From contig NW_025767046.1 of NCBI RefSeq assembly GCF_003918875.1, forward strand, positions 2,604,001-2,668,000: 64,000 nucleotides of DNA, written 5' to 3'. Origin of the DNA: Haliotis rubra. Lineage: Eukaryota. Position numbers and translations under genes: made by a program. The notes below the pieces were generated by a model. It had not been told where the DNA came from and searched no databases. It saw only the letters and a list, made by a program, of their open reading frames with translations. This document shows, piece by piece, positions 1 to 62,965 of the stretch (position 1 is the stretch's first letter; each line of letters begins with the position of its first letter).

Positions 1-2061
1 AAATAACACTAGGAACGGGTTTACATGAACAAGGAATCTAATGTATATTGTATGCCATTGACCGTGTCTCTGAATTTTGTTCTGAACACCTACATGATTG
101 AGTGAGTGAGATTGTTTTACGCCGCACTCGGCAACATTCAAGCTATATGGCGGCAGTCTGTAAAAGTCTGGACCAGAAAATCGAGTGATCAACATCACGA
201 GCATCGATCTACGCAATTGGGATACGATGACATGTGTCAACCAAGTCAGCGAGCCTGACCACCCGATCCCGTTAGTCACCTCTTACGACACACATGGGTT
301 GCTGAAGATCAATTCTAACCCGGATCGTCACGGGTAACACCTACATGAAATACGAACTATCTTCAACGGTTGCATGCACAAACAAAAATGTAATTAATTC
401 ATTACAACTCATGCAGAGTTAGTATATTGTCAGTTTGTCCTTAAAGGTGACTATTATACAAAGCCGGTTCTGGATGCTGTCATAGATTGCATTATCGCCA
501 GAGGCTCGGTTTTGTTATTCAAGTCTCATAAATTGAATCGACGTTTGTCTGACAGGTCAAGCTGCTTATGGTCATGTTAAAGATCCTTCACATTCTTGAA
601 AGATATGTTATGCAAATATTAGAGATCTTACGCAATTTTACACCAGTGGTTATAACCTGAAAACGATTTCAACAGCAGCTCTTTCTTTAGTGACTTAGTT
701 AACAAGATATTATTAAATTTTATTGTCCAATGCAAAATCTAATTGTACTCTAAATTTATTTTTGGTAAAATGTAGTATTCTTTCAGCTCAGACGTCAATG
801 GCTCTGGCTCATTGTTACAGGGTTCTTCTTAATATTATTGTACGCTTGTATTTAACAAGAATGGTTTTATATCTATTCATCAGTTGAAACCTATTTTGTG
901 GTACATCAACACTGTTTTGCCGGCTTGTTTAAAAATAATGGTATATGTATGTTTTGGGTCAAAATATGCTGACACATCAGTATTCACAAACCAAACCACA
1001 GCTTTATTGCATTGATTACATAATAATGAAGCTGTTGCTTGAGGGTATATCCCTGTAATTAAGTTATTCCACTTCAAATTTCATATTATAAACTATGTAA
1101 AAATCCCAAGGACCCATTCATGTCAGTTTGTTCGTGGAGAAACATAAACCTCCATGAAAGATAATATGTATTTATTCTGAACATGTTTTCAATCTACAGC
1201 TGCATACTAAAATGTATGGGGATATAGGAAAGGGGTGATTTGATCATTATATATACATCATCAACAAACGGATAATCACATAACATGTGATGATACATTC
1301 TGAAACATTGTATTCTCCTCAAACCAGCTGCACGCAATCCTAAATGAATAATGTCTCCATTGCGTTTGAAATCTATACGTGTTTGTGCATTGAAGGACAT
1401 TTGTGTATGGTCGAGCGATACATCCCCGCTTCACGCATGTAGGTTCTAAATACGTACAGCGTCCATTTCGTTATGGATTTCATAGACTTCAACTTTCTCT
1501 GATACAAAATGTCCTTCTTGTGTAAAGAACTATTCACGGATTTGTTTTATATTTGGACTAAAAATATTTTATGATATCTTTTTAAAAATCTTCTTGTACA
1601 CTCTAAATCACTTTATGTAGAGACTGTAGGTGAAATCTGTCGATTTGCATGGGCTATTAGACATTTTCGTTTCAAGTTTAGGTCACTAAGCCATTTGCTC
1701 TCAGATACTGGAACCCTAACAACAGATCGTATTTCGTTTTTATTGCAATGCCTACTATATCCGACACCAGGTGTTCGAAAAATGGGGTATGCATGCCTCG
1801 TGACCTGTGGAAGGGATTATTCATGGAAATAAGTAATGCATTGATTGCGCCTGAATGAACGTGGGAGCCACAACATTGCGTAACCCAAATAAACATCGTG
1901 AGAAAATGTCCAGCGTGAAAGAGATATATATTAATGAGCGCCTCGTTCTTAACGTATCCTTGATGCCAGTCCTTAATTGCATATGTTACATGGGATAGGA
2001 CTTCTCTTTCATTTCCGTGGCATAATTACCGGTAATTACCAGCTTATTATACCTGTAGTGG

Positions 2062-2124: not shown

Positions 2125-3969
2125 ATGGCTTTCCTCGCAGTAGCTCTTCTATCTGTCATATCTCACCTGGCTTTGGGTCAAGGTTTTGGACAGAGCAATA
2201 CAGGTGTTGGTCAAGCTAATGCAGGATTTGGTTTGGGTCAGGCAGGAGGGTCTTGGGGTCAAGCTGGATTTGGAGTTGGTGGAATTGGCGCTGGTGGATT
2301 TGGTAACCATGGACGCGGGATTGGTGGAGCAGGTTGGGGTCAAGTAGGAGCAGGATTTGGCCAGAACATTGTCAACCCTTTCCTGAGTGAGTATTAATGC
2401 ACAATATAATTTACAACCAGGTCAATTCGCTTTATGATCATCGAACGCCCGACAGTATTGTATATTGATACGGGAATACTTCAGGTGTCTTCCCGATACC
2501 CATGTTCACTTGACATGCGGGATGTATTGACAATATGTTATGTTTTACAAAACGATGTTTGTGTTTGAGGGTCCAGAATAGTAAACGGTTAGATCCTAAA
2601 ACATAAGTGCACATTTACTAACCATTAAACGCCTATTTGTATTATATATGGGGTAACGTATTATTTTCTTTTTGCCCCAGATACAACCATCACATGCACT
2701 GGAACAGCTACAGGATTTGCCTTCTCTGCGACCCTAAGGAGGATGCAGCCATCTTGGGGAGGATGGGGTGTAAGTAGTCTCATTCACTGACTGAATTGGC
2801 CTGGGGTTTCGGGTGTTAGAAACTTCTTTAAAGTTAAACACTACATTTAATAGTACCTACGTCAGTTATGTACAAACAGATTGATTCATTTGTCAATACA
2901 GCTTGGTCGATCTAGAAGTGGACTGACTGGATCTGCCGTTCTAAGGACTACAACCGCATCAGGAACCTACAACCTCGTCATCACTGAGAGGTCTCGTGTT
3001 GAGGCTGGATGTACCGCTGATGGACTTGGACCTGTCATTGGAAGGTAGGGACGAGGTGTTCTTGATATGGGTCGTTTGGATGGGGTGGGATTAGTTAAAA
3101 CAATATTGGGAAAGTATTATGTATTTTGGGGTTTGAACCACACACGTTTAACGAGTGTTTAAAGAATTTTCACATTTTTACGCTTGAATAAAACTTTTAT
3201 CCCGACCGGTAAAGAGAAGTTCTCTAATGCATCTTGATATCACACAATGTCTCTTCAACAGCAACGTTTGGGGCCAACGTCAAGGTCTTGGTCAAGGCTG
3301 GGGTCATGGTCTTGGTCAACAGTGGGGTCAAGGTCTTGGTCAAGGATGGGGTCATGGTCTTGGTCAACAGTGGGGTCAAGGTCTTGGTCAACAGTGGGGT
3401 CAGCCATGGGGACAGCAATGGGGACAAGGTTCATTGGGCACCGGAACGACCACCACCCCCGGAGTTGTCAGCTCTGTCACCCTCACTACCAACCAGGAGA
3501 CCATCGTTGACTTGGGTACTGCCAACCTACCATTCAGAGAGCTCGAGAGATACGGAGGACGTGGTCTGGCTGTAAGTATTTTTTAAAAACTTGTTTGAAG
3601 TCATTTTATAGTGTCCAGACAATTTAAAGGAAGTCCTATTGTCCGCTTATGTACGTTTTTAATCAAATCCACCATCGGCGTAACAGGGAAATTTGGATTC
3701 ATCACACATAGTTAACAATGTGTGAATCACTCAAATTGAAAACAGAACAAAACAAATGTCTGGTTAGACCTGTAAGTATTAAGTGTTATAATAAACTCTG
3801 TAAGATAGATGTAGCTCTGTAACTAATGGCATTGTCTTACTGTTGTTTTCAGTTGTGCACATCCTTGACCACTGGCACTGATGGACGTCAAGTGTGTATG
3901 GAGCCTATTCTGGCCTGCTGCAAGTTGGGATTCGACAACATGGACGCTGTCACACCAACACCTCCATAA
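2125..3969 (+). CDS. Paralog A: secreted Gly/Gln/Trp-rich protein with C-terminal 6-Cys (putative degenerate Cu/Zn-SOD-fold) domain, 306 aa
   Basis: Exons 2125-2386, 2681-2769, 2902-3044, 3262-3571, 3853-3969. All introns GT-AG; spliced frame open to TAA. Signal-peptide-like MAFLAVALLSVISHLALG|Q; C-terminus LCTSLTTGTDGRQVCMEPILACCKLGFDNMDAVTPTPP. Confidence 0.93.
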
Positions 3970-5589
3970 ATGAGTGATGGGGAAGATGGAAGAAGTGTGT
4001 GAATGTTGAATGCAAAATGTGTGAAAACGTTTGTTATGTTACCAATAATCAATATATTTAGATAATTATACAATTTCTCATATTTTCATTTCATGTGACA
4101 TTGCTACATTTGTTGTCTGCATGTCCCTGCATGTTTATCATCAGTCATTATCAAAAGTACAAAAGATATTTATTTCATAAATAAAAAAATACGAAAACAA
4201 CACGTGTTTCATACTTCTTATGTCAAAACAGCATCAGTAATTATGTGCAAACACGTGTCATTAGACACGTGGATCACTTCTCTGAGAGACGAAAGGTGAC
4301 TGCAGTGCCAAGGATTGTATGCCAGATCGTGGCTTTGAGTGAGTGAGTCAGTGAGTTTAATTTTACGCCGCACTCCTCATTATTCCATCTAAAATGACGG
4401 CGGTCTGTAAATAATCGAGTCTGGACCAGACAATCTAGTGATCAACACCATGAACATCGATCTGCGCTATTGGGATACGATGACATGTGTCAACCAAATC
4501 AGTGAGCCTGACCACCCGATCCCGTTAGTCGCCATTTACGACAAGCATGGGTTACTGAAGATCAATTCTAACCCGGATCTTCACGGGTCTCATGGCGTCC
4601 GCTTTGACAGACGAAAGGGTGACCCAAGTGCAAATGATTCATGTTGGATCACAGCTTGGATGGGAACATGTGGGACCCTGAGGTCGAAGACGCCAGAACT
4701 GATTGTGTACGCAGGTTTTCCATTTACACGGATTTGACAAACCTTGATGTAACTGAAATGTATTTTAAATAAGTGTAAAACGTTTCTCATTGAGTCACTG
4801 CTCTTACAGTATTATCATCGTAGAGGAATTCCTACCTTGAAGCGGATGCCTGCTTGATTGGTCAGAATAATATTAATATTAGAAAATGCACCAGCCTTTT
4901 CATACCTGGACTTCCGTATGATTAAACATATCCATCGATAGCCTATCAGTGTATACAACAATGGTTGTCTCTTTTACACTGCAGAAGCACCAGTCCAAAC
5001 ATTATGAAGTGAAGGTGAGGTGAAATGGGGTTTAACGTCGTATTTAAGAATATATCGCTCATATGACAACGTGCATGCGTGTGTATGTGTGGCTGCTTGT
5101 ACTAGCCCAGACTTAAGCTGGTTTTATAGTGCTAGCTCACTGAGATACCATGCCGCAGTTAAGCATGGCTACCCTACTCAGACACATTATACCGACTCCG
5201 ATCCGACCAGTCCCAGGCCGGGAACAACAAGTGCCATATTTTAACGTCTTTTGATATGACGCGGCCGAAGATCGAACCCGCGACATTTTGCTCTCCATAT
5301 AAAGAAGTCTGTTTCAAAACATATTAAATATAGCTGCTAGTGACCCATCAAACAAAAGTCTATATCAGTGTTAGCACAAGATTAATTCCAGTGCGATTGC
5401 TCCGTCACGGAAAGAAAGAATACTTAATTCATAAGATCATATTTTCAACACCCGGGGATCATTCAACTCGCGTAGCCACTAGACGCACCAGGTTAGTGTG
5501 GCTTTCCCATCCTTACGAGGTACCCATTCACAGCTGGGTGGACAGGGACACATAGTCACAGTACTTTGTCCAAGTTTACTGCACGTTGC

Positions 5590-11560: not shown

Positions 11561-13766
11561 ATGGCTTTCCTCGCAGTAGCTCTCCTATCTGTCATAGCTC
11601 ACCTGGCTTTGGGTCAAGGTTTTGGACAGAGCAATACAGGTGTTGGTCAAGCTAATGCAGGATTTGGTTTGGGTCAGGCAGGGGGGTCTTGGGGTCAAGC
11701 TGGATTTGGAGTTGGTGGAATTGGACTTGGTGGACGTGGGCTTGGTACCCATGGACAGGGAATTGGTGGAGCAGGATGGGGTCAAGTAGGAGCAGGATTT
11801 GGCCAGAATATTGTCAATCCGATCCTGAGTAAGTATTTATGACTTATATAATTTTCGTTTCAAACTGAAAATGTTCTTTCTAAATTTTAGGCAACAGCTC
11901 AAAATAGTTAACGCTAGACGCTAGACCTTTAAGAAGCTATGTTGATCGCTGGACTGTCTGGTCCTGACTCGATTATGTACCGCCATATAAATTGAAAATT
12001 GCTGAGTGCGGCTTGTAAGAAAAAACAAACAAACCAACCAATCCTTTAGAAGCTTGGACATTGCCTAACGAAATTATTCCTTGTATGTTTATATTGTACG
12101 ACTTAAAGAGTTTAACTCGAGGAACTCCCCGATACACATTGCAACTGGACATTCCCTGAACATTTGCTTACTTAACTACCATTTGTAAGTTCAGTGTTTA
12201 ACTGTAACTGTTTTCCCCCAGATACGACCATTACATGCACTGGAACAGCTACAGGTTTTGCTTTCTCTGCGACCCTAAGGAGGATGCAGCCGTCTTGGGG
12301 AGGATGGGGTGTAAGTACATGTAGTCTTATCTATTGACTGAACTGGTCTGGGGTTCTGAGGGTCAGATACTTCATGAAGTGTTTCTTCACTGACGGACAA
12401 AAGAAAGTATAAAATCGTGTTTGATGTGGGTCTCATGGTTGTTGAACCTGAAGTGTGTAATTGGCATAAGCCTGGTAACTTTAGATGAGGAATATTATAT
12501 GTATTTTAGCAAATCCACATTCGTTTTTGACAGTCACTACATACTCCTCCCCTGACTTGAGTGTTTTGAAACGAACTGAGATTGTTTTTATTACAGTTTG
12601 GTCGATCACGTAGTGGACTGACTGGATCTGCCGTTCTTAGAACTACAACAGCGTCAGGAACCTACAACCTCGTCATTACTGAGAGATCACGTGTGGAGGC
12701 TGGATGTACCGCTGATGGACTTGGACCTGTCATTGGAAGGTAGGGACGGGTCATTTGTCATTTAGATTCCTCTGAAGGGATGAGGGAAGTGTAAACCATT
12801 CTGGGAAAGAAGTATGTGTCTCCCCAAGCAAATGTTTAATATATCTTTGTATCAGTAAAGCATTTTCTCATTAGCAATTGTAAAAGGAAACGATTATAAA
12901 ACATCACCTAGTCTCCTCCACACCAGCATGTAATGGTCTCACCATTAACACTTAGCATTTAAAAAAGTATCACATTTTAAAAATGAATAAAATGTTTGCC
13001 GGAAAATTGTTGTCAAATGCATCTTGATATCACACAATGTCTCTTCAACAGCAACGTTTGGGGCCAACGTCAAGGTCTTGGTCAAGGCTGGGGTCATGGT
13101 CTTGGTCAACAGTGGGGTCAAGGTCTTGGTCAACAGTGGGGTCAAGGTCTTGGTCAACAGTGGGGCCAGCCATGGGGACAGCAGTGGGGACAAGGTTCAT
13201 GGGGCACCGGAACGACCACCACCCCCGGAGTTGTCACCTCTGTCACCCTCACGACCAACCAGGAAACCATTGTTGATTTGGGTACTGCCAACCTGCCATT
13301 CAGAGAGCTTGAGAGATACGGAGGACGTGGGCTGGCTGTACGTATTTTGTTTAAATCACATGTAAAGTTACTTCATAGTCCCCAGAGACTTAAATAATGT
13401 GTCTATTATGTACAATTTTAACCAAACCCACCGACGGGGAAATTGAAAGCTGTGAGTTGTTTCAATAATATTTTATGTCATTTCATAGTCCTCACAAAAT
13501 TGGAATTACACCCGCCGGGGACGTGTCGGGGAAATAAAAATGATTACGAAATACAATTTGTTGAGTGCTTCACAGATTTATCAGTGCAGGAAGGTAAGAG
13601 TTAAACTATCCACCCCAAACAAATAACACTACCTTACTATTGTTTTCAGTTGTGCACATCCTTGACCACTGGTACAGATGGACGTCAAGTGTGTATGGAG
13701 CCTATCCTGGCCTGCTGCAAGTTGGGATTCGACAACATGGACGCTGTCACACCAACACCTCCATAA
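11561..13766 (+). CDS. Paralog B, 300 aa (closest to A)
   Basis: Exons 11561-11828, 12222-12310, 12597-12739, 13052-13337, 13650-13766. Same phases and exon 2/3/5 lengths (89/143/117) as A. Confidence 0.93.
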
Positions 13767-14150: not shown

Positions 14151-15907
14151 CATTAATATGAGCATTCCTTCAGAGCGTCCATCTACATTAATATGAGCAT
14201 TCCTTCAGAGTGTCCATCTACATTAATATGAGCATTCCTTCAGAGCGTCCATCTACATTAATATGAGCATTCCTTCAGAGCGTCCATCTACATTAATATG
14301 AGCATTCCTTCAGAGCGTCCATCTACATTAATATGAGCATTCCTTAAGAGCGTCCATCTACATTAATATGAGCATTCCTTCGGCGTCTTTCTACATTAAT
14401 ATGAGCATTCCTTCAGAGCGTCCATCTACATTAATATGAGCATTCCTTCAATGCTTCCATCTACATTTATATGAGCATTCCTTCGGCTTCTTTCTACATT
14501 AATATGAACATTCCTTCAGGGATTTCATGTACATTAATATGAACATACATACAGGGCTTCCATCTACATTAATATGAACATTCCTTCGGGGCTTCTTTCT
14601 ACATTAATATTAACATTCCTATAAGGCTTCCATCTACATTAATATGAGCATTCCTTCAGGGATTTCATGTACGTTAATATGAACATTCCTTCAGGGCTTC
14701 CATCTACATAAATATAAACATTCCTTCCGGGCTTTCATCTATATTGATATAGGCATTCCTAGACGGCTTCCATCTACATTGATATGAACATTCCTTCAGT
14801 GTTTTCATGTACATTATTATGAACATTCCTTCAGGGCTTCCATCTACATAAATATAAACATTCCTTCCGGGCTTTCATCTACATTGATATAAGCATTTTT
14901 AGACGGCTTCCATCTACATTGATATGAACATTCCTTCAGTGTTTTCATGTACATTATTATGAACATTTCTTCAGGGCTTCCATCTACATAAATATAAACA
15001 TTCCTTCCGGGCTTTCATCTACATTGATATGAACATTCCTAGACGGCTTCCATCTACATTGATATGACCATTCCCATAGGGCTTCCATGTACATTGATAT
15101 GACCATTCCTTCAGGGCTTCAATCCACATTGACTTGACCATTCCTTCAGCTCTTCCACCTACATTAATATGACCCGCGGTCCTTCAAGGCTTTCATCCAC
15201 ATTAATATGACCGGTCCTTCAGGGCTTTCATCCATATTAATATGACCGGTCCTTCAGAGCTTTCATCCACATTAATATGACCGGTCCTTCTTGGCTTTCA
15301 TCCACATTAATATGACCACTCCTTCAGGGCTTTCATCCACATTAATATGACCGGTCCTTCAGGGCTTGCATCCACATTAATATGACCGGTCCTTCTTGGC
15401 TTTCATCCATATTAATAAGACCACTCCTTCAGGGCTTTCATCCACATTAATAAGACCACTCCTTCAGGGCTTTCATCCACATTAATATGATCGGTCCTTC
15501 AAGGCTTGCATCCACATTATTATGTACGGTCCTTCTTGGCTTTCATCCACATTAATATGACCGGTCCTTCAGGGCTTTCATCCACATTAATAAGACCACT
15601 CCTTCAGGGCTTTCATCCACATTAATATGACCGGTCCTTCAAGGCTTGCATCCACATTATTATGTACGGTCCTTCTTGGCTTTCATCCACATTATTATGA
15701 CCGGTCCTTCAGGGCTTTCATCCACATTAATATGACCGGTCCTTCAGGGCTTGCATCCACATTAATATGACCACTCCTTCAGGGCTTTCATCCACATTAA
15801 TATGACCACTCCTTCAGGGCTTTCATCCACATTAATAAGACCACTCCTTCAGGGCTTTCATCCACATTAATATGACCGGTCCTTCAGGGCTTGCATCCAC
15901 ATTAATG
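14151..15907. repeat. 35-bp minisatellite, ~50 units
   Basis: Unit CATTAATATGAGCATTCCTTCAGAGCGTCCATCTA, drifting to CATTAATATGACCGGTCCTTCAGGGCTTTCATCCA. Confidence 0.95.
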
Positions 15908-21751: not shown

Positions 21752-24700
21752 TTAAGGGGCTGCCGGGGTGACAGCATCCATGTTGTCGAATCCCAACTTG
21801 CAGCAGGCCAGGATAGGCTCCATACACACTTGACGTCCATCAGTGCCAGTGGTCAAGGATGTGCACAGCTGAAAACAACAGTCAGGTAGTGTTATTTGTT
21901 CGTCTTAGAGAGATTAAGGCCATTTGGTTAAAAGAACATTTCCACTCTAAGGACACTTAAGAAAGATTTTCTTTTCGACATTTGATACTCTCATCCTTGA
22001 CCTGAATTGATTGCTAATAATCTCAAATATGAATATCTTAATAATAAGGAGAAGTCTTATAAAAAGCAACAAAGCATGCACAAAGCGCTAACACCCTAAT
22101 TTTTATTACCCCGGATAACCCAAGCTGCCTGTTTGGCGCTAGAAGGTTATAGTCACATGACTTTATCCAACCGGGTTCCCATTTTCTGCTGGGTGAACAT
22201 AGGCAAGTTTGAACAAACTCACTTGCCTAAGGTGAGACCACATGTATCGCACGTGCTTCGTTGTTGGGCAGGACGTAAGTCCTAGAAACTCTCAGGAGTC
22301 AAGTTTTCAAACACGGTCACCCATCCAATGACTGTCCGAGCTCGCCGCTGCTTAACTTCAACTGATTCGTGACCTGCGCTCTGTGCACAGGACCACACGC
22401 CACCACATCTTCAAATATATTGTAAATCTCCGGGGACTATGAAAGAACAATACATGCAATTTAAATCAACTACTTACAGCCAATCCGCGTCCTCCGTATC
22501 TCTCGAGCTCCCTGAATGGTAGGTTGGCAGAGCTCAAGTCGAGGACAGTCTCCTGGTTAGTACTGAGGGTGACAGAGGTGACAACTCCAGGGGTGGTGGT
22601 CGTTCCGGTGCCCCATGAACCTTGTCCCCACTGCTGTCCCCATGGCTGGCCCCACTGTTGACCAAGACCATGACCCCATCCTTGACCAAGACTTTGACCC
22701 CATCGTTGGCCCCAAACGTTGCTGTTGGAGAGACATAGTGTGATTTCAAGATGTAGTTGACAACAAATTTCCAGTAAACGTTTTATTCAAGTTTTAAAGA
22801 TGTGACCCCATCGTTGGCCCTACACATTGCTGAAAGTGTAAGGAAACATTCATTTCATATTCATCATATTATATCATTTTATGAAAAAATTGATGATTCA
22901 TCACTTGGATTCGTTATGATAACCTTAGAAATCATAAATATTTTCAGAAGTAAGTGATAATATAATAGTTTGTTGCTAATGCCACTTTCTAGAGACAGGC
23001 AGGATATGGTCAGATTTTTAACTTTTAAAGGTAGGTCCGAGATACAATACGCCAACATATCGCACGCATTTGACTATATGAATTTTGTAATCCTCCGCCT
23101 CCTTCGGAATCAAAATGATCCTTACCTTCCAATGACAGGTCCGAGTCCATCAGAGGTACATCCAGCCTCTACACGAGATCTCTCAGTGATGACGAGGTTG
23201 TAAGTTCCTGACACAGTGGATGTTCTCAGAACAGCAGATCCAGTCAGACCTCCGCGGGATCGACCCAACTGGAAAGGAAAAAACAAAACAAATATAGGGC
23301 ACTAGAGTTTGTGAAGATTCCACACTTCTGAAATGATGGAAGCGGATTTCAACAGTATGGCAACAGAGAATATATAATATCATTGCCAGACATTAACCAT
23401 CCTCGATTGTCTACCAAAACCGATTCCAATTGGCGTAAACGACAAAATTATATGAGTGAGTGAGTTGATTTTTACGACGCTTTTACGCAATATTCCAGCA
23501 ATATCACGGTGGGGAACACCTGAAATCGGCTGCACACATTGTAAGGCTTGCCCTCATTTCGCCTACAGTAATTTTAATGGCCATTTCTACCACCCCTATG
23601 ACAATAATGGGTATTACCCAACTGGCTGTTAACATTAAACAAATAGATCTTGTCTTCGGCGTGACGAGCGAACACCCCTGAAGTAATATGAACGGATAAC
23701 TGAAAAGCATGATGACACAAGACGTTTGTACAAAGGGAAAACATGTCCTGCACTAACTGTAACACGAACCACATTTTGCAAAATTTGTAGTTAAAGATAG
23801 GTATTGGTTTATTGTCTTACGCCGCACAGGAATACACCTGCAAAACGACCGCGGTCTCTAAACGAGTCGGGCGATGGGGTAGCCTTATGGTTAAAGCGTT
23901 CGCTGGTCACGTCGAAGGCCTGGGTTCGATTCCCCACATGGATACAATGTGTTTCTGGTGTCCCCCCGCCGTGATATTGCTGGAATATTGCAAAAAGCGG
24001 CGTAAAACCAACTCACTCGTCCTCTCTGAACGAGTCGCATGCATGGTACGCAGTTGACCTGTCATGTTGACCTGTTATATTTAAATAGAAGGAATTCAAC
24101 GTATACCACGGAGAACTTTGCTGACAATCACAGAAAGGTTATCAGGTCGAAACCGGGCTTCGAAACAAAGATCACGTGTTTCTGCCAGGCCTTAAGATCG
24201 CAACGTCGTAACGTCGCAACCGTAGAGACTGAGCAACAAATGTCTCTTAGTGAGTGAGTGAGCTTAGCGTTACGCCGCTTTAGCAATATTCCAGCAATAT
24301 CACGACGGGGACACCAGAAATGGGTTTCACACATTGTACCCATGTGGGAAGTCGAACCCGGGTCTTTGACGTGACGAGCGAACGCTTTAACCACTAGGCT
24401 ACCCCAGCGCCCCTTTTCCTTAGTGAATATGAAACAACCTCGTAGAACATCATTAAACAACTTACTCCCCATCCTCCCCAGCTGGGCTGCACCCTCTTCA
24501 GTGTGAAAGATCCCGTGATGCCTGTAGCTCCGAACGTGCAGGTGATGGTAGTATCTAAGAAGAAAAGCATAAATGTATAATTATAATTATTAGCCCATTC
24601 TTTAAAAAACCCTGCAGCTATTGATCTATTGCATTATTTATAATCATGTTTGATGTAAGTATTTAATCGATATTTCACGAAATACTGTTATGATCCATGT

Positions 24701-25569
24701 GTTTTCCTTGTTGCTTGAATGAATGTATTGTACATATACAGTTCTACTGAGATCACTACGAATATGACACCGATCCGGATCTGAAGTTGGACTGTAAATT
24801 GTTATACGGATTAGAATTGGTCTATGCTTGTTACGAGAGGCGAGTAACGGGTCAGGTTGTCAGGCTCGCTGACTAGGTAGGAACGCGTTAACGTATCCCA
24901 TATCGATGCTCATTTAGTCAATCACTGGATTGTCTGGATTGTTGCCTAGACTCGATTATTTATAAACCGCCGCGATATAACTGGGACATTGGTGAGTGCG
25001 GCGATAAACAACAGAAAATACCCACACACATAATAGTATCATACCTTAAAAGGGGGTACGGAATACATGGTGATGGCATTTTAGGTCGACGTAAATATTA
25101 CTGCCTTCGCTTACAGTGTTTTGTTGAAATAGTAGTATAACGAAACGAAAGCTTATCACTATAAATACTTACTGAGGAGAGGGTTAATCCTGATCTGTCC
25201 CCATCCTGTTCCTGCTTGACCCCAGCCAGCACCTGCTTGACCCCAGCCAGCTCCTACTTGACCCCAGCCTGCTCCTACTTGACCCCAACCGGCTCCTGCT
25301 TGGCCCCATCCAGCACCTGCTTGACCCAATCCAGCACCTGCTTGACCCCATCCAGCACCTGCTTGACCCAATCCAGCATTAGCGATTCCTTGTCCACCAT
25401 TGCCAAATCCAAGTCCGTTGATTCCAGATCCTATTCCAGCGGTGCCAATACCAAACCCAGCGTTACCTTGACCTTGACCTTGACCGGCGTTACTAAAACT
25501 CTGATCCCATCCTTGACCAAAGGTCAGGTGAGCTATGACCGATACAAGTGCTGCTGCGAGTAATACCAT
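21752..25569 (-). CDS. Paralog C, 329 aa, (GQAGAGW)n N-terminal repeats; mosaic gene
   Basis: Exons (minus) 25569-25173, 24554-24466, 23268-23126, 22721-22478, 21868-21752. Frame is open if the acceptor at 22722-22723 is used; a dead second exon-4 start lies at 22829. Confidence 0.88.
22105..22406 (-). mobile_element. 5S rRNA-derived SINE (SINE3-like) in intron 4 of paralog C
   Basis: Minus strand GAAGTTAAGCAGCGGCGAGCTCGGACAGTCATTGGATGGGTGACCG resembles the 5S internal control region (GAAGCTAAGCAGGGTCGGGCCTGGTTAGTACTTGGATGGGAGACCG), followed by a GTTCACCCAGCAGAAAATGGGAACC body. Confidence 0.65.
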
Positions 25570-33286: not shown

Positions 33287-35849
33287 TTAAGGTGCTGCCG
33301 GGGTGACAGCGTCAATGTTGTCGAATCCCAACTTGCAGCAGGCCAGGATTGGATCCATACACACTTGACGTCCATCAGTTCCAGTGGTCAAAGATGAACA
33401 TAGCTGAAAACAGTAGAAGATAATGTCATGTCTTTGTTTTTGAGTGCTTAGATCGTTTTAACAAGGATACGAGTGGCTCAGGACAAAATACAATGATTTA
33501 AATCCAATAATTTGTAAGCTTACACGTTAACAAAACTATATAGCCTTAACGTATAATACACTTTTATTAAAGGATGAAATATGTGAATAAAGACCTTCAT
33601 AAAGAGGTGAAACCTATCGGAACAGATATGTATTCTAAAATGATAACGCCTGTCAAAATGTGTCGAGCACTTACAGCCATTCCGCGTCCTCCGTATCTCT
33701 CGATCTCTCTGAATGGCAGGTTGGCGGAGCTCAAGTCAAGGACAGTCTCCTGGTTGGTGCTGAGGGTGACAGAGGTGACAACTCCGGGAGTGGTGGTCGT
33801 TCCAGTGCCCCAAGACTGACCCCACTGTTGACCAAGACCTTGTCCCCACTGATGTCCCCATGGCTGACCCCACTGTTGACCAAGACCTTGACCAAACCTT
33901 TGGCCCCACACGTTGCTGAAAGTTCGAAGGAACTATTATTTTCGTTCAGATCTAAAATATTTGACGTGAATTGTTGGCATGGAAAAAGTGGGTGAATTAG
34001 TGCATTACGCTAATGTTTTACCGTTAGAAACATTTTCTAAGTGGTTTACTAATTGGTTACATAACAACTTATGGTATGGATTGACAACGTCTTTATTTAC
34101 GACACGACGTTTCTGAGCTACTACTTGCCCCTTCATCAAGTGAAACATCATCACCTGATGAATGCCCGTGAAGATCCGGGTTAGAATTGGTCTTCAGTAA
34201 GAGGTGACTAACGGGATCGGGTGGTCAGGCTCGCTGACCTGGTTGATACATGTCATCGTATCCCTATTGCCTAGATCGATGCTCATGCTGTTGATCACTG
34301 GATTGTCTAGTCCAGACGCGATTATTTACAGACCACCGCCATATAACTGGAAAATTGCTGTGTGCGGCGTTAAAAATAACAATCACTTAGTCACCTGATG
34401 AAGTGGAAAGAAGTAGCCCAGAATCGTCGTGTTGAAAATAATAAAGAAATTGTAAATTCATATCATACGTTGTTTTGTTACCATCCAACAATCTGACTAA
34501 TTGGTTGTTCTTAAAGGAAGCTTCCCGAGACTCGCGAATGATAGTCAGATCTTTCAAGGACAGGTCCGAGACACAATGAGCCATCACATCGCACACTTTG
34601 ACTATATGATTTCAGTAATCCTTCGCCTATTTCGGGATCAAAATGATCCTTACCTTCCAATGACAGGTCCGAGTCCATCAGAGGTACATCCAGCCTCCAC
34701 ACGAGATCTCTCAGTGATGACGAGGTTGTAAGTTCCTGACACAGTGGATGTTCTCAGAACAGCAGATCCAGTCAAACCTCCACGGGATTGACCCCACTAT
34801 AATATGTAAGAAAGAAGATACGGGAATGTGTTCTTGTTGGTCATTCTGTGATGTTGCCCAAGTGCATAGTTTTCACGAAAAATGAATGTTTACACGATCT
34901 GACATATTCTGATAGTTCTACATAACCTGCGTACACATTAGTCGAAAGTGAAGCATGTTAGAAACGTTTCCCACTCTGACATCCCCACAACCGATTATGG
35001 TGCTAGCAAACAAGGAAATGATTCACGACTTAATCACTGAATACGATACAGATGCTGATGAATGAACAGAAACAACTTACGCCCCATCCTCCCCAGCTTG
35101 GTTGTCTCCTCCTCAGGGTCAAGGATCCTGTGATCCCTGTAGCTGTGAAAGTACAGGTGATGGTTGTGTCTGAAACCAAGACAAATGTCAAATGAAAACA
35201 GTGTTATACCATATACTCAAAGTAAAAAAACATCATATTGAAGCTTAGCCCTTGTCTACGTTGTCAGTTCATAATTTGAAACATATGTTTCAAGTTTCAT
35301 GTTACTTTCAAGTTTGAAAGTGGATATACGTTGTATAAATCATTTAAGATTATCTTACATTAAATATATGACATAAGAAACTTAAATGTTCTCACTCAAG
35401 ATAGGATTGATGATGTTCTGTCCAAGTCCTCCTATTTGTCCCCATCCTGCTCCAAGTCGACCAAAGCCAAGTCTGGGTAGACCAAGCCCGAATCCTGCCT
35501 GACCTAAACCTGCTCCGGCTCCAGCTTGACCAAATCCTGCTCCAGCTTGACCAAATCCTGCACCAGCTTGACCAAATCCTGCTCCAGCAGCTTGACCTAA
35601 ACCTGCTCCTGCACCAGCTTGACCAAATCCTGCCCCAGCTTGACCCACACCTGCTCCTGCTTGACCAAATCCGGCTCCTGCTTGACCAAAGGCTCCACCT
35701 GCTTGACCAAAACCTCCCCCTGCTTGACCAAAGGCGGCTCCAGCTTGACCCCAAGATGATCCAGTATTACCAAAGCCCATTTGACCCATACCTTGACCAA
35801 AGGCCAGGTGAGCAATGACAGATAGAAGAGCTACAGTGAGGAAAGCCAT
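33287..35849 (-). CDS. Paralog D, 347 aa, (GQAGAGF)n N-terminal repeats
   Basis: Exons (minus) 35849-35396, 35169-35081, 34796-34654, 33915-33675, 33403-33287. ATG 35849 chosen by homology (MAFLTVALLSVIAHLAFG) and a TATA box just upstream. Confidence 0.92.
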
Positions 35850-36359: not shown

Positions 36360-36507
36360 NNNNNNNNNNNNNNNNNNNNNNNNNNNNNNNNNNNNNNNNN
36401 NNNNNNNNNNNNNNNNNNNNNNNNNNNNNNNNNNNNNNNNNNNNNNNNNNNNNNNNNNNNNNNNNNNNNNNNNNNNNNNNNNNNNNNNNNNNNNNNNNNN
36501 NNNNNNN
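36360..36507. other. Assembly gap (N run)
   Basis: Run of n; a ~50-bp direct repeat lies on each side (~36255 and ~36628). Confidence 1.
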
Positions 36508-40672: not shown

Positions 40673-42886
40673 TCAGGGGGCTGCCGGGGTGACAGCGTCC
40701 GTGTTGTCAAATCCCAACTTGCAGCAGGCCAGGATAGGTTCCATACACACTTGACGTCCATCTGTACCAGTGGTCAAGGATGAACATAGCTGGAAACAGT
40801 TTGAAGATAATGACATGTCATTGTTTTGGCAAGGATACACGTGGCTCAGGAAACAAACAATTATTCATTTTCAAATATCAAATTTGCAAGGCTATATATT
40901 TGCAAATACACTGTACACTGTTATAACGCAAAATGTGTTTTAAGGTTTAAATGGTATATTATGAGAATTGATTGAAGCTCAAATTTGTCAATAAAGACAT
41001 TCCTAAAGATGTAAAACCTGTCGGAGCAGATGGATATTCTGAAATGGTGCTGCATGTGACAAAATTATCGAGCACTTACAGCCATTCCGCGTCCTCCGTA
41101 TCTCTCGAGCTCCCTGAATGGCAGGTTGGCAGAAGCCAAGTCAACAACAGTCTCCTGGTTGGTGCTGAGGGTGACAGAGGTGACAACTCCGGGAGTGGTG
41201 GTCGTTCCAGTGCCCCATGAACCTTGTCCCCACTGCTGTCCCCATGGCTGACCCCACTGTTGACCAAGACCATGACCCCATCCTTGACCAAGACCTTGAC
41301 CCCATCGTTGGCCCCACACGTTGCTGAAAGTGTGAAGAAAAACTATTTTAGTCAAATCTGATTATCTTATCTCAGATGTTATTTTATGAATCGGTGAAAC
41401 AAAAACTTGCCTGAATCAGCTCGGTTTGATAAAGTAGGAATCTTTAACATAATGTTTCCCAGATAAATATCTTTTGAATATACTATGTCATGGATGGAAG
41501 GGGATTATTGTAGAAGCAGGATTTACAACACGAGATATGGTCAGATCATTGCATTTCAAGATAGGTCCGAGACGCAATCACATTGGATTATATACTAGTA
41601 TATTCAGTACACCCCTCCTCCTTTGGAAACAAAAAGATCCTTACCTTCCAATGACAGGTCCGAGTCCATCAGAGGTACATCCAGCCTCCACACGAGATCT
41701 CTCAGTGATGACGAGGTTGTAAGTTCCTGACACAGTGGATGTTCTCAGAACAGCAGATCCAGTCAAACCTCCACGGGATTGACCCCACTATAATATGTAA
41801 GAAAGAAGATACGTGAATGTTTTTTATAGTTAGTTATTCTGAGACATGCTTTTGAAGTAATAAGGACATAAGACATCTTCCAGGTTTACATAATCTACCT
41901 TCATTTCACGGCAGTACTAACCTAATGAAAGAACGAGGAAAGTTCCGTTTTGTTTTAGCATTGTTCAGTTGTTCCAAATCATTTACCATGTGGTGAAATC
42001 CACGCACATTGGGTTTTTTTGAAAAAGGGGTCATACAAACTAGCTGATATATACAAACGATTTTCAGTTTGACATAAACAGGTAACAAAAGCGCCCCTCT
42101 CTGTGGTGATATGTTAGTCTATCACACTGAATAAGTGACACATTCTGATAAGTGAACTGAAAAAAAAACTTACACCCCATCCTCCCCAGCTTGGTTGTCT
42201 CCTCCTCAGGGTCAAGGATCCTGTGATCCCTGTAGCTGTGAAAGTACAGGTGATGGTTGTGTCTGAAAACAAGGCAAAGCTAATTAAATCGTGCTGTACC
42301 ATTAACTTAATGTTCCAAAACATCATATTAACACAGCTTTGATCATTGCTCTACCGGCGTCTTACATTGCTTTACATCAGTTTAAATTTGTGTTCCAATT
42401 ACCATCTATAAGTTTGAAATTTGTTTGAGATTATCTTACATTAAAATGAATGTAATAAGAAACTATAAGAAGCTATGACTCACTCAAGATAGGGTTGACG
42501 ATGTTCTGTCCAAGTCCTCCCATTTGTCCCCACCCTGCTCCAAGTCGACCAAAGCCAAGTCTGGGTAGACCAAGCCCGAATCCTCCCTGACCTAAACCTG
42601 CTCCGGCTCCAGCTTGACCAAACCCAAACCCTGCCTGACCTAACCCTGCTCCTGCTTGACCAAATCCTGCCCCAGCTTGCCCCACACCTGCTCCTTCTTG
42701 ACCAAATCCGGCTCCTGCTTGACCAAAGGCTCCACCTGCTTGACCAAAACCTCCCCCTGCTTGACCGAAGGTGGCTCCAGCTTGACCCCAAGATGATCCA
42801 GTATTACCAAAGCCCATTTGACCCATACCTTGACCAAAGGCCAGGTGAGCAATGACAGATAGAAGAGCTACAGTGAGGAAAGCCAT
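40673..42886 (-). CDS. Paralog E, 331 aa (closest to D)
   Basis: Exons (minus) 42886-42484, 42262-42174, 41787-41645, 41323-41080, 40789-40673. GT-AG introns, open frame to TGA. Confidence 0.92.
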
Positions 42887-49172: not shown

Positions 49173-52100
49173 ATGGCCATGCTGCATCTTGTTCTTGTGG
49201 CTGCTCTTGCTCACCTAACCTCAGGACAGGGTTGGGGAGCAGGACGTCTTTCACCTGGAAGGGGGGCTGTTGCACCTGGAATCGGGGGTGCTGGTCTTGG
49301 AATCGGAGGTGTTGGACCTGGAATAGGAGGCGCTGGATCAGGTTTTGGGGGTACTGTGTCTGGTTTCGGGGGTGTTGGGACAGGAATCGGGAGTGCTGGA
49401 CTTGGAATTGGTAGAACCTCTTCCTTTGGTCTGGGAGCATCATTGTTTGGTCTCATCAACCCTTACTACAGTACGTATGTTTCTTGTCGATTTTCAAAAG
49501 ATCAGTATATTATTATCGTTGATGACAGAAACAGAAAGGCAGGTTTCAGTGGTTTCTGTCACACCAGTCATTATAGTATCTTAAGAACCATAAGTTTCAA
49601 GGGTATTGTATATCCATGTCCATACAGTGCACGTGTCACCCTTACTTCATTGACTTACTTGACGTAGTTCTCTTTACTCCTTGAGGAGCATAGGGCCTCA
49701 ACAGTTGTCCTCCACGCTTGCCGTTCAATGGCTATGCTCTTGGCAGTCTCCCAGGTTAAGCCGGTTTCCATTAGTTCCTTATCCAGGCTTCGTCTCAAGG
49801 TCAGTTCTAGACGTCCTCTTTGCCTCTTGCCTTACTTCTTTACTATAGACAATATCAATATTTTTACAGACACAACAATCACCTGTTCTGGCACGGTGCC
49901 TGGATTCGCCTTCGCTGTTACCCTGAAAAGAGCACCACCAGTATTTGGAGCGTGGGTGAGTAAATGTATATTCAAGACGTTCTACACGTTAAGACAATCA
50001 TATTCTAACAAGTGGTCTCTTGTGACAACCTCTTGCCGCTTCACGCAACTTCATTAATGTCAAAAAGTTCGCGTTTAATGTCAGGTTCAAACTTCAAGGT
50101 TGAGGTTTCAAGTGAACTCTAGTGTTCGCAGTCTTCATATTCGAGTGTTGACATATCATTATCTATCTATAATTGTATGTATAATTGCGTCGATTTACTT
50201 GTTTAGAATGGTCAGTGAGTTCCTGAATTACTGCAACAAACAATACCGTGACGTCATTAAAGTGGTATTAAAAATAATTTCAAACGTGCACACAAACTGA
50301 CCTATGAGGAAGTGGTATAGCATTGGTCTTGCTTGACGACTATAGAGATTGGGTTGTCAGGTACATGGACTAGGCTGATGCATGTCATCGTATCCCAACT
50401 GCGTAGATCCATGCTCATGATGTCGATCACTAGACTGTCTGATCCAGACTCGAGTATATACAAACCGCCGCTATACAGCTGGACAGTTGCCAGGTGCAGC
50501 GTAAAACAACAAACTTTCGTCAATGAATTCTTGATTGTTACGGATCCAGTGGATTTATGTCCAAATGTATGTGTTTCCATTTTTTCACAGTGGGCTCAAA
50601 GGCAAGGTGGACTGAGTGGAAGCGTTGTGCTCAGAACTACATCTGCTACAGGGAACTTCCAATTTGTTCTCACTGAGCGAGCCCGTACTGAAGGAGGATG
50701 TACTCCAGATGGCCTGGGGAATGTCTTTGGCAGGTATGCCGTTAAAATGATACATCATGTCAAATGTACATAAGCTCCTCGTGAATTGATGTTCACGTGA
50801 ATCTTGTTCAAATATGGTTCATTGCTCCTAGCTCTGTTGATCGGAATGCATTACAGCTATCATTCTCAACTCCCTGGAGAGTATAACTCAAGCAGCCGAC
50901 GGGCGTTCGAAGGTGTTTCTATCAACCTCACATATCGTCATAGCAATTCGGGTTAGAATTGGTCCTAAACAACTCATGCTTGTCGTAAGAGGCGACATCG
51001 AATCCCAATTGCTTAGATCGATGCTCATGCTGTTGATCACTGGCTTTTCTGGTTCAGATTTGATTATTTACAGACCGCCGCCATATAGCTGGAATGTTGC
51101 TGAGTGCGGCGTAAAACTAAACTCACTCACTTCGAAGCTCGTTATGTGGATCACTGGATTGTCTGCCGCCATATAGCTGGGATACTGCTGGGTGCGGCGT
51201 AAAACTAAACTCACTCACTTCGAAGCTCGTTATGTGGATCACTGGATTGTATGCCGCCATATAGCTGGGATACTACTGGGTGCGGCGTAAAACTAAACTC
51301 ACTCACTTCGAGGCTCGTTATGTGGATCACTGGATTGTCTGCCGCCATATAGCTGGAATACTGCTGAGTGCGGCGTAAAACTAAACTCACTTCGAGGCTC
51401 GTTATGTGGATCACTGGATTGTCTGCCGCCATATAGCTGGAATACTGCTGAGTGCGACAAACGTTTAAACAACAAACAAACAAAATCACATACGTGAACC
51501 TTTTTCCTGAATGGTGGACTCTTTTTAACTTGCGCAGCATGACACTTATCTTTCCGACACTTGTGTTACGGATGCATCAATCGTTTTTTTTGTTGCACCC
51601 ACCTGGTCATCAAATGCATTACTAAGCACAGACGTTTTGCATAGTTCACTAATTAATTTTAGTCGTTTAGGATGTAATACAAACTTGAACTTTCGCTGTT
51701 CTTCATTCCTAAACTCAGCAATCCTTTTTTCCGTAGTAACGCTCTGGGCCTTGGACTCGGTCAAGTGTTTGGGCAACAGTGGGGTCGGGGTTTTGGAAAA
51801 CCATGGGGTCAGATATTTGGTACTGGCAGAGTCACCCGGCCTGGAGTCGTTGCCGATGTGACCATTGCCAACGGAGGCAGGACCCTTGACGTGGCCTCAC
51901 TCAATCTGCCGTTCAGAGACCTCGAGAGATATGCAGGACGTGCCTTTGCTGTAAGTGACTTTCCCAAACCGTATCCAAAACTAACATTTGACAGTATCAA
52001 CGACAATGTGTAAGTCAATTGTTTTACCTGTGACATAATGAAAGGCAATGATTGAAACAGATGTAGTAAGCCCTGTACGAATAAGACGTATGAAAACATT

Positions 52101-61857: not shown

Positions 61858-62965
61858 TTAGGGTATGGGAAGTAGGACGGCATCCTGGTTGTCATAACCC
61901 ACTTTGCAGCAAGCAAAGACTGGGTCCGTACACACTTGGCGACCAAAAGCATCTGTTGTAAAACCAGTACACAACTGCAACAAGATTTGACGACATCAGA
62001 CACTTAAGTTTAGGGCATTATATATTTTAAAAACGATAGACAATATTATTTAGGACAAACAACGCACAAAACTACCACTGTTTTCCTCCTTTGATATTCA
62101 TTTGTATATATAGTAAATTTTGTATTAAACATTATCGTAAGACCTCTTACAAAACATACATACTGTATTCTGACGGATATTAGCACGGTGTCTCAGACGG
62201 TTTGTATAAAAGGATATTTTCAGGAAAATACTGGAAAAAATTAAATGGCAGTTCGATTATATCAGTTGAATGTACAGTGAAATCTACTCACAGCAAGTCC
62301 TATTCCAGAATATCTCTCAAGGTCATCAAACGGCATGTTCACTGAAGCCACGTCAATCGTAATTTCCCTGTTTTGTTGCAGCGTTACCTCAGCAATGACT
62401 CCTGGTCGGGTATTTGCCGGGGCAAAGAAGTTGAAACGTTGACGAGGTCTTTGGTGGAAAACGAGAACAAGACATAATAAAGCTAGGATGTGCTTCTATG
62501 AACAATAAATGATACGTCTATTTACCAAGATAACTGAAACTCTAGAGAAAAATATACCAGCAAATGTTTTCATCGTGCGTCTTGTACAGAAACCATCTTC
62601 CTCAGCAGTGGTTGGAGAACTGCTAAAGCTGACACTAGCTCATCAGTGCTTAAGCAAAACACGATATGAATATTGACGGCAATTTTGAATGTAAATAATA
62701 AGTGGTTATCTTTTTCGCATGTAAAGTCACCAAACTGTCTGAAATGTTTAGAGATATGTAACGAAAGTTCTCTTTGTTTCACAAGAGCAGCGTTTATCAT
62801 AAATGATCTAAAATGATAAACATACCTTTGAATCACAGGCCCCAATCCATCAGATGTACATCCTCCTTCAACGCGGGCTCTCTCGTTGGCTACAAGTAAA
62901 AAGGTTCCAGAAGCCGTTGTTGTTCGGAAAACGAACATTCCACCAAGAGTTTGACGTCTGAGCCA
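61858..62965 (-). CDS. Paralog G, partial (exons 3-5 only; 5' exons presumably beyond the window); lacks the GQW insert
   Basis: Exons (minus) 62965-62826, 62448-62292, 61974-61858: WLRRQTLGGMFVFRTTTASGTFLLVANERARVEGGCTSDGLGPVIQR/PRQRFNFFAPANTRPGVIAEV...LERYSGIGLA/LCTGFTTDAFGRQVCTDPVFACCKVGYDNQDAVLLPIP*. Confidence 0.85.

What the first reader, a model, noticed from the sequence alone, without database searches (positions are those of the whole stretch)
3262..3450. Variable GQQWGQGL octapeptide repeat inserted inside the globular domain, at the presumed Zn-loop position
Seen: between GLGPVIG and TPGVV, exon 4 carries 24-nt-unit repeats (GQGWGHGL/GQQWGQGL/GQQWGQPW). Exon 4 is 310 nt in A, 286 in B, 244 in C and E, 241 in D, 214 in F and 157 in G, which has no repeat. 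Inference: a surface loop freed from metal binding became a tunable Trp-sticker/Gly-Gln-spacer segment that could drive self-assembly or coacervation. The composition superficially recalls the prion octarepeat PHGGGWGQ; I treat that as convergence.
Basis: partly seen in the sequence, partly recalled or inferred. Interest (0 to 1): 0.7.

Follow-up and report, generated by a model that had tools for sequence, protein, structure and literature searches.

The report
Variable repeat loop in abalone pseudo-SOD
A cluster of abalone genes encodes secreted glycine-rich proteins whose folded core is a metal-free copy of the Cu/Zn superoxide dismutase barrel. The loop that binds zinc in the enzyme is replaced by a floppy Trp/Leu-Gly-Gln repeat that changes length from gene to gene, which suggests a tunable building block for an extracellular material, though no function has been tested.

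Summary
The window matches Haliotis rubra RefSeq proteins exactly and holds seven five-exon paralogs. In gene A, 3279-3430 is a 24-nt (8-aa) tandem repeat, far above shuffled controls. Its real period is a tetrapeptide, hydrophobic-Gly-x-x, with Trp and Leu alternating. A and B each carry a near-identical recent unit duplication.

Sequence searches (Pfam, PDB) find no SOD. Two AlphaFold models (core pLDDT >90) match only Cu/Zn SODs: Z 12.1-8.7 for the top 14 chains, with the next unrelated fold at 6.0. The barrel contains no histidine. The repeat lies between strand 4 plus the conserved Cys and strand 5, which is the zinc sub-loop of loop IV, and it is predicted disordered.

An exhaustive HMM search adds context. 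This is an unannotated family found across gastropods, and the same loop ranges from 21 to 107 residues with lineage-specific low-complexity fillings.

Self-assembly or coacervation remains an untested inference. Copper binding is unlikely, because each loop has only 0-2 His. No tissue or proteome evidence was found. This is a new variant of the known non-enzymatic secreted SOD-like proteins of molluscs.

The parts
2125..3969 (+). Gene A, five exons: 2125-2386, 2681-2769, 2902-3044, 3262-3571, 3853-3969. It encodes 306 aa: signal peptide, Gly-rich GFGQ/GWGQ tail, then a SOD-like barrel carrying the loop repeat.
   Evidence: Model equals XP_046578036.1 (P0007) exactly. Splice joints are seen in a spliced contig.
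3262..3571 (+). Gene A exon 4 (310 nt). It encodes the end of loop IV, the repeat, and strands 5-7.
   Evidence: AG/GT boundaries; joints 3044/3262 and 3571/3853.
3279..3430 (+). Tandem repeat of 24-nt units (8 aa; underlying period hydrophobic-Gly-x-x). It includes a 48-nt duplication whose two copies differ by 1 nt.
   Evidence: TRF, unit table, shuffle test. Predicted disordered, pLDDT 44-58.
13052..13337 (+). Gene B exon 4 (286 nt), repeat 13069-13196. Two adjacent 24-nt units are identical.
   Evidence: Model equals XP_046578037.1.
22478..22721 (-). Gene C exon 4 (244 nt), repeat about 22623-22708.
33675..33915 (-). Gene D exon 4 (241 nt), repeat about 33807-33908.
41080..41323 (-). Gene E exon 4 (244 nt), repeat about 41225-41310.
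   Evidence: Model equals XP_046578039.1 (P0001).
51737..51950 (+). Gene F exon 4 (214 nt) with a degenerate L/F/W-Gly-x-x loop of 35 aa. An alternative in-frame acceptor 18 nt upstream (51719) is not excluded.
62292..62448 (-). Gene G exon 4 (157 nt), no repeat. The loop is PRQRFNFFAPAN. Exons 1-2 of G were not found in the window.
   Evidence: Contained in XP_046578041.1. The G-type ortholog model has pLDDT 90.4.

Best explanation
Shown: genes A-G encode secreted proteins built from a signal peptide, a Gly/Ala/Gln tail with Phe/Trp at roughly every seventh residue, and a 153-residue, six-cysteine beta-barrel with the Cu/Zn superoxide dismutase fold. The barrel has lost every histidine, so it is a non-catalytic, metal-free pseudo-SOD. 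The stretch that forms the zinc-binding sub-loop of loop IV in the enzyme is here a disordered (W/L/F)-Gly-x-x repeat. It grows and shrinks by replication slippage or unequal exchange of 24- or 48-nt units, giving 15 to 66 loop residues among the seven paralogs. The longest versions are confined to the H. rubra A/B group. Inferred: the barrel acts as a stable, possibly oligomerising hub. The tail and the loop act as multivalent aromatic-sticker, Gly/Gln-spacer arms that hold the protein in a condensed, gel-like or elastomeric extracellular material. Candidates are shell framework, periostracum or another secreted matrix. On this reading, the paralogs offer graded numbers of stickers.
For: Gene models and repeat. 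RefSeq identity. Spliced contig. Fold: model of A has core pLDDT >90 with the eight strands in SOD order. VIA-align against 48,161 chains puts 14 SOD, CCS-domain-2 or SOD-like chains on top at Z 12.1-8.7, and the next unrelated fold scores 6.0. The Foldseek top 50 are all SOD or EA4 for both models. The repeat-free G-type ortholog folds the same way with pLDDT 90.4. His count in the barrel is 0 in A-G. The hydrophobic i to i+4 spacing with Gly at +1 holds in 14 of 15 positions. Family context: 55 HMM hits, with named members from Haliotis, Gigantopelta, Lottia, Patella, Lymnaea and Physella. The same loop is 21-107 aa (median 45) and is filled with G/Y/M/F/L/H low complexity resembling structural matrix proteins. 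The tree shows the long loops (59-67) only in the H. rubra A/B-type genes, against 40-45 in their orthologs. Precedent: the non-enzymatic SOD homologs cavortin, dominin and pernin form particles and are linked to shell formation (PMC6530089). A major Lottia shell protein combines a long disordered region with a SOD domain (PMC4094399).
Against: There are no tissue or protein-level data. None of six family-specific peptide strings occurs in the 28 supplementary files of the H. laevigata shell proteome or in the text of the H. asinina shell proteome paper. Sequence methods do not link the domain to SOD: Pfam finds no Sod_Cu on full-length proteins or on 51 family members, and PDB profile searches find nothing. 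The SOD relationship therefore rests on predicted structures. Disorder is inferred from low pLDDT only. Self-association was not tested. The P0014-type paralogs have short loops (15-17 aa here), so a long repeat is not required by the family.
Confidence: 0.55

Rival explanations
1. The repeat is a tolerated, slippage-prone surface loop with no function of its own. Once metal binding was lost, the loop was unconstrained, and simple-sequence expansion and contraction are neutral.
For: Unit duplications are very recent and differ between A and B. Loop length varies 21-107 aa across the family, with unrelated compositions. Some paralog types keep short loops.
Against: All six repeat-bearing paralogs and their orthologs in four Haliotis species keep the reading frame. 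They also keep the strict hydrophobic-Gly-x-x register and 6-8 Trp in the A-E types. Unrelated gastropod lineages all fill the loop with aromatic/Met plus Gly sequence rather than random composition. The N-terminal tail uses the same sticker-and-spacer pattern.
Confidence: 0.22
2. The WGHG units bind Cu(II) as the prion octarepeat PHGGGWGQ does, so the loop is a replacement metal site.
For: There is a superficial resemblance in composition (W, G, H, Q). One of 51 family members gives a sub-threshold Prion_octapep hit at E=0.1. Distant relatives carry His/Asp-rich stretches just before strand 5.
Against: His occurs only 2, 1, 1, 1, 1, 0 and 0 times in the loops of A-G, and it varies between near-identical paralogs (A against XP_046578035.1). 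The prion unit needs one His per repeat followed by Gly-Gly, whereas here His is followed by Gly-Leu. This comparison rests on established knowledge of the prion octarepeat and was not tested here.
Confidence: 0.06
3. The Trp-rich loop is a ligand-binding surface. It could bind chitin or another polysaccharide, or a mineral face in a matrix. Alternatively it could bind microbial patterns in a plasma defence protein of the cavortin/dominin type, with the paralogs giving varied specificity.
For: Exposed Trp commonly stacks on sugars (general knowledge). Cavortin and dominin are secreted pseudo-SODs reported to bind pathogen patterns and metals (PMC6530089). Tandem gene expansion fits either a defence or a matrix role.
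Against: There is no lectin-like or chitin-binding domain signal. The loop is predicted disordered and repetitive, not a shaped site. The Gly-rich tail points to a material role rather than a soluble receptor.
Confidence: 0.15

Closest known systems
Cu/Zn superoxide dismutase (SOD1/SOD3; Pfam Sod_Cu PF00080)
   Same: It has the same eight-stranded Greek-key barrel over its whole length (Z 12.1, 132 residues aligned to human SOD1). A nearly invariant Cys follows strand 4 and another lies in the last strand, where SOD1 has the Cys57-Cys146 disulfide. The shortest loop IV in the family (21-22 aa from the Cys to strand 5) is about as long as in SOD1.
   Different: There is no Pfam or PDB sequence match. 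The barrel contains no His, so the Cu and Zn sites are absent. The zinc sub-loop is replaced by a low-complexity repeat, and a long Gly-rich tail is fused at the N-terminus.
Non-enzymatic extracellular SOD homologs of bivalves: cavortin (Cg-EcSOD), dominin, pernin
   Same: These are secreted molluscan SOD-fold proteins without dismutase activity. They self-assemble into particles, have been proposed to act in shell formation, and occur as tandemly duplicated genes in oysters (PMC6530089; PMC9118643).
   Different: Those proteins are recognised as Cu/Zn-SOD domains by sequence, still bind metals, and are not reported to carry a low-complexity insert in loop IV or a Gly-rich tail. The present family is from gastropods and is invisible to Pfam.
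Lottia gigantea shell matrix protein Lotgi1|166131 (disordered region plus SOD domain)
   Same: It has the architecture of a long disordered region followed by a SOD-type domain, in a gastropod shell matrix protein (PMC4094399).
   Different: Its SOD domain is detected by standard domain tools, and the disordered part precedes the domain instead of being inserted in it. Relatedness to this family was not tested.
Gly-rich silk-like or elastomeric structural proteins (shematrin-type GYG/GLG repeats, silk-like structural proteins of McDougall et al. 2016)
   Same: They are secreted and Gly-rich, with short periodic aromatic residues. NCBI auto-names for family members (spidroin-1-like, fibroin heavy chain-like, elastin-like) reflect this composition. 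Silk-like proteins of H. asinina are expressed in nacre-forming mantle (PMC4944945).
   Different: Those proteins are not built around a pseudo-SOD barrel. The two H. asinina proteins described there have other repeats ([GN]n, GGSGGSGFG, GMGA, QQQV).
Prion protein octarepeat (PHGGGWGQ; Pfam PF03991)
   Same: An eight-residue Gly/Trp/Gln/His unit in a disordered, length-variable array.
   Different: There is no significant match (E=0.1 in 1 of 51 members). His is present in at most 2 units per loop. The real period is 4 residues, and the array lies inside a folded domain rather than in an N-terminal tail.

Membership tests
Cu/Zn superoxide dismutase (Sod_Cu, PF00080) | Eight-stranded Greek-key beta-barrel fold | tested here: met
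   AlphaFold models have core pLDDT >90. VIA-align gives Z 12.1-8.7 to 14 SOD-type chains, and the next unrelated fold scores 6.0. The Foldseek top 50 are all SOD or EA4.
Cu/Zn superoxide dismutase (Sod_Cu, PF00080) | Match to the family's sequence profile | tested here: not met
   There is no Sod_Cu hit at E<=10 for full proteins or domains, or at E<=1 for 51 family members. PDB profile searches find no SOD at E<=10. One Lottia member carries a UniRef name 'SOD copper/zinc binding domain-containing' from another source.
Cu/Zn superoxide dismutase (Sod_Cu, PF00080) | Cu ligands (His46, 48, 63, 120) and Zn ligands (His63, 71, 80, Asp83), human SOD1 numbering | tested here: not met
   The barrels of A-G contain no His at all. 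The only His residues lie in the repeat.
Cu/Zn superoxide dismutase (Sod_Cu, PF00080) | Intrasubunit disulfide between loop IV and strand 8 (Cys57-Cys146) | tested here: inconclusive
   Cys after strand 4 and Cys-Cys in the last strand are invariant or nearly so across 51 sequences.
Cu/Zn superoxide dismutase (Sod_Cu, PF00080) | Dismutase activity | not testable with these tools
   An enzyme assay is needed. Activity is expected to be absent because the ligands are absent.
Prion octapeptide repeat (PF03991) | Profile match and one His per PHGGGWGQ unit | tested here: not met
   The best hit is E=0.1 in 1 of 51 members. There are 0-2 His per loop.
Molluscan non-enzymatic extracellular SOD-like proteins (cavortin/dominin/pernin) | Secreted, SOD-fold, catalytically dead | tested here: inconclusive
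   A hydrophobic N-terminal signal-like sequence is visible in the models, but no signal-peptide predictor was available. The fold criterion is met and the ligands are absent. No sequence comparison with cavortin or dominin was possible, because neither sequence was available by reference.
Shell matrix proteins of Haliotis | Peptides recovered from shell proteomes | tested here: not met
   Six diagnostic peptide strings are absent from the 28 supplementary files of the H. laevigata proteome, and related strings are absent from the H. asinina paper text. Stored files may be truncated, so this is weak negative evidence.

The most novel reading that the evidence does not exclude
Loop IV of a metal-free SOD barrel has served across gastropods as an evolvable cassette for low-complexity 'sticker' sequence. 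This would create a hub-and-arms protein class, not yet recognised, that assembles extracellular materials. In this reading, tandem paralogs with different repeat numbers act as a built-in series that tunes material properties. It would be a natural counterpart to the aggregation of metal-free SOD1 through its disordered loops.
Probability: 0.3. Interest if true: 0.7.

Novelty: new variant of a known kind. Interest (0 to 1): 0.5.

Why it matters
The result gives a fold and a family identity to a set of abalone genes that RefSeq names misleadingly: RNA helicase A-like, glycine-rich cell wall protein-like, spidroin-like, collagen-like. It defines a pseudo-SOD family found across gastropods and absent from Pfam. 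It also shows a rare architecture in which a long, repeat-driven disordered segment sits inside a small, stable barrel, at the site that binds zinc in the ancestral enzyme. If the loop and tail drive assembly, the paralog series from G (no repeat) to A (66-residue loop) is a ready-made natural experiment on sticker number in an extracellular material. That would be relevant to biomineralisation and to protein-based materials. Nothing here points to a new mechanism of biology, and the function is still unknown.

Tried and rejected
- Pfam on single-exon translations and on full-length proteins gave no SOD hit. The only result was a sub-threshold FlgD_tudor match over strands 5-6, at E about 0.01-0.07 on the proteins scanned alone and 0.0009 at best among the 51 family members, which I treated as noise.
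- PDB sequence-profile searches with 6- and 51-sequence alignments gave only chance hits.
- Spliced proteins have no window reference. I reached full-length proteins by querying the word search with the uninterrupted open frame around exon 1 of gene D and restricting scoring to the exon part.
- Has-GRBP, the glycine-rich boundary protein of H. asinina, was considered as an identity for the family. I dropped it because its described repeats (GMGA, QQQV) do not match.
- Paper searches for the Lottia member's locus number, and for 'glycine-rich cell wall' together with abalone, gave nothing useful.
- The shell-proteome peptide search was negative.
- A search of earlier findings by words found nothing.
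- A residue-level alignment to SOD1, or a profile-profile comparison with a SOD alignment, could not be made. No genuine SOD sequence was available by reference, and I did not type one from memory.
- The N runs at 36360-36507 and 54160-54298 were left untouched.

Full report
**What is in the sequence.**

The window has introns, SINE-like elements and satellites typical of a mollusc. Around the finding I assembled a five-exon gene, A: 2125-2386, 2681-2769, 2902-3044, 3262-3571 and 3853-3969. All internal boundaries are AG/GT, and the frame encodes 306 residues. blastn and tblastn of its exons against the window found six more copies. These are B (+, 11561-13766), C (-, 25569-21752), D (-, 35849-33287), E (-, 42886-40673), F (+, 49173-52784) and G (-, 62965-61858). 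Exons 1-2 of G were not found in the window.

A word search seeded from the open frame around exon 1 of D returned Haliotis proteins. Models A, B and E are identical to H. rubra RefSeq proteins XP_046578036.1, XP_046578037.1 and XP_046578039.1, and G is contained in XP_046578041.1. Consecutive accession numbers (XP_046578032 to 41) on one 3.5-Mb scaffold show that the tandem array continues upstream of the window with at least four more family members.

**The repeat.**

TRF reports a 24-nt unit x5.2 (87% matches) and a 48-nt unit x2.6 (94% matches) at 3279-3402. Lag-24 and lag-48 identities are 0.78 and 0.86, against a maximum of 0.48 in 5000 shuffles.

In a 24-nt register, A reads LGQGWGHG, LGQQWGQG, LGQGWGHG, LGQQWGQG, LGQQWGQP, WGQQWGQG. 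The two 48-nt blocks differ by one base. B has two identical adjacent LGQQWGQG units. The expansions are therefore recent and arose separately in A and B.

The underlying period is four residues: a hydrophobic residue (W or L alternating, F in gene F) followed by Gly. In A, 11 of 14 spacings equal 4, and Gly follows the hydrophobic residue at 14 of 15 positions. G has no repeat; its loop is PRQRFNFFAPAN.

A 795-nt contig from a related organism, in a run guessed to be RNA, lies on exons 1-5. It has joints at the predicted splice sites and a repeat shorter by 66 nt that stays in frame. The repeat is therefore coding sequence, and its length differs between species.

**What the flanking domain is.**

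Sequence methods say nothing:
- Pfam finds no Sod_Cu on exon pieces, on full proteins or on 51 family members.
- HMM profiles of the family find no solved structure.

Structure prediction gives a clear answer. With a 51-sequence alignment, the domain of A (P0007:85-306) gives pLDDT above 90 in most 10-residue blocks outside the two loops. The model has eight strands in the order of the SOD barrel. It also has a stretch from about residue 88 to 147 with pLDDT 44-58 and no secondary structure. That stretch is the repeat.

VIA-align against 48,161 representative chains ranks 14 Cu/Zn SODs, CCS domain 2 and a SOD-like protein first. Their Z scores run from 12.1 to 8.7. Human SOD1 aligns 132 residues, model 4-213 against chain 1-153. 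The next unrelated fold scores 6.0. Foldseek's top 50 are all SOD or EA4.

The repeat-free G-type ortholog (P0018:56-220) folds with pLDDT 90.4 and pTM 0.84. It shows the same strand order and again matches only SODs, with a best E of 4e-4.

Both halves around the insert therefore belong to one barrel, and the insert is not an inter-domain linker.

**Where the insert sits.**

In the model, strand 4 ends at residue 61. The nearly invariant Cys is at 70, followed by a short helix at 72-75. The disordered repeat comes next, and strand 5 starts at 149.

In Cu/Zn SOD, loop IV between strands 4 and 5 has two parts. The first is a disulfide sub-loop holding Cys57. The second is the zinc sub-loop holding His63, His71, His80 and Asp83. 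This is established knowledge of SOD1. I could not make a residue-level alignment, because no SOD sequence was available by reference.

The barrels of A-G contain no histidine at all, so neither metal site can exist.

**Family context.**

An exhaustive profile search with a repeat-poor alignment found 55 proteins at E<=0.001. Two of these are bacterial repeat proteins that I set aside as spurious.

Named members come from Haliotis species, Gigantopelta aegis, Lottia gigantea, Patella caerulea, Lymnaea stagnalis and Physella acuta. The rest are unnamed transcript-sized contigs. One Lottia member is auto-named 'Superoxide dismutase copper/zinc binding domain-containing protein' in UniRef, which is an independent hint of the same superfamily.

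Across 51 aligned members, the segment from the conserved Cys to the Gly before strand 5 ranges from 21 to 107 residues, with a median of 45. It is filled with Gly plus Tyr, Met, Phe, Leu or His low complexity that differs by lineage. Low-complexity filling of this loop is therefore an old and recurrent trait, and the Trp/Leu-Gly-Gln version is the Haliotis form.

A tree built on barrel columns only separates five paralog types. The loop lengths below are as measured in that tree, which runs 1-3 residues longer than the counts used elsewhere:
- G-type: 12-16 residues.
- F-type: 35-36 residues.
- P0014-type: 15-17 residues.
- C/D/E-type: 40-45 residues.
- A/B-type: 59-67 residues in H. rubra, but only 40-45 in H. 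asinina, H. cracherodii and H. rufescens.

**How it probably works.**

Shown: a signal-like N-terminus, a Gly/Ala/Gln tail with Phe/Trp often seven residues apart, a six-Cys pseudo-SOD barrel, and a disordered periodic loop.

Inferred: the barrel is a stable hub that may oligomerise. The tail and loop are multivalent aromatic-sticker arms that hold the protein in an extracellular condensed or elastomeric material. Repeat number would set the valence.

Two precedents make this plausible. Cavortin, dominin and pernin are secreted molluscan SOD homologs without activity that form particles and are linked to shell formation (PMC6530089; PMC9118643). A major Lottia shell protein pairs a disordered region with a SOD domain (PMC4094399).

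Against it, I found no tissue or proteome evidence. Six diagnostic peptide strings are absent from the H. laevigata shell proteome supplements, and related strings are absent from the H. asinina paper.

The copper idea is weak. The loops of A-G hold 2, 1, 1, 1, 1, 0 and 0 His, His differs between near-identical paralogs, and the prion profile does not match. A neutral slippage-prone loop remains a serious rival. Conservation of frame, register and Trp content across four species argues against pure neutrality.

**Verdict.**

The functional interpretation is plausible but untested. The finding is a new architectural variant of the known non-enzymatic secreted SOD-like proteins of molluscs, and it marks a gastropod family that current domain databases miss.

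**Limits.**

- The sequencing runs were coded, so no tissue could be read from them.
- The assembly gaps (N runs) were left as they are.

Noticed in passing
window 27645-30665 (-): An uninterrupted 1006-aa ORF lies between genes C and D on their strand. It is rich in Ser, Thr and Asp (201 S, 171 T, 161 D) and built from 21-nt-period repeats. The opposite strand is also open (961 aa), as is common in such repeats. It may be an acidic matrix protein gene or only a repeat artefact.
   Followed up: partly
window 25199-25378, 35493-35750, 42606-42787 (exon 1 of C, D, E): The N-terminal tails are 21-nt (7-aa) tandem repeats (GAGWGQA / GAGFGQA) of 8.6 to 10.9 copies. Copy number varies between paralogs, as in the loop repeat. 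Exon 1 ranges from 262 to 454 nt.
   Followed up: partly
family alignment A3, between strands 2 and 3 (gene A residues about 109-124, QPSWGGWGLGRSRSG): A second loop of the barrel also varies, from 0 to 28 residues within the trimmed alignment. In full-length distant relatives a long Gly/Met/Tyr/His stretch lies between the first two strands and strand 3, so loop IV is not the only insertion site.
   Followed up: partly
P0021, P0022, P0028, P0038, P0045, P0053, P0057 (distant family members): In many distant relatives the loop ends with a His-rich then Asp/Glu-rich stretch immediately before strand 5 (for example HGHGHHFDDDAG). This is where SOD1 has His71, His80 and Asp83. It could be a remnant or a re-invention of metal or calcium binding.
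   Followed up: no
window 3430-3450 and equivalents (GTGTTTTPGV): A conserved Thr run followed by Pro closes the loop in A-E and may be an O-glycosylation site. A conserved Asn-Thr-Thr sequon opens the barrel in A-F.
   Followed up: no
window 14151-15906: A 35-nt satellite of 50 copies (85% matches) lies downstream of gene B.
   Followed up: no
window 100-300, 4330-4400, 51077-51456, 63100-63230: Copies of a SINE-like element begin with GAGTGAGTGAG...TTTACGCCGC. At 51077-51456, inside intron 3 of gene F, there is an 88-nt unit repeated 4.4 times.
   Followed up: no
window 51719 vs 51737 (gene F exon 4 acceptor): Two in-frame AG acceptors lie 18 nt apart. The upstream one would add six residues (NPFFRS-type) to the loop. 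The H. asinina F-ortholog has two annotated isoforms that differ by one residue at this junction.
   Followed up: no
RefSeq names of the cluster (P0001, P0007, P0012, P0014, P0020, P0081): The automatic names (ATP-dependent RNA helicase A-like, helicase glh-2-like, glycine-rich cell wall structural protein-like, collagen alpha-1(I)-like) come from low-complexity similarity and are misleading. XP_046578034.1 lacks exon 2, and XP_046578041.1 has an aberrant N-terminus.
   Followed up: partly
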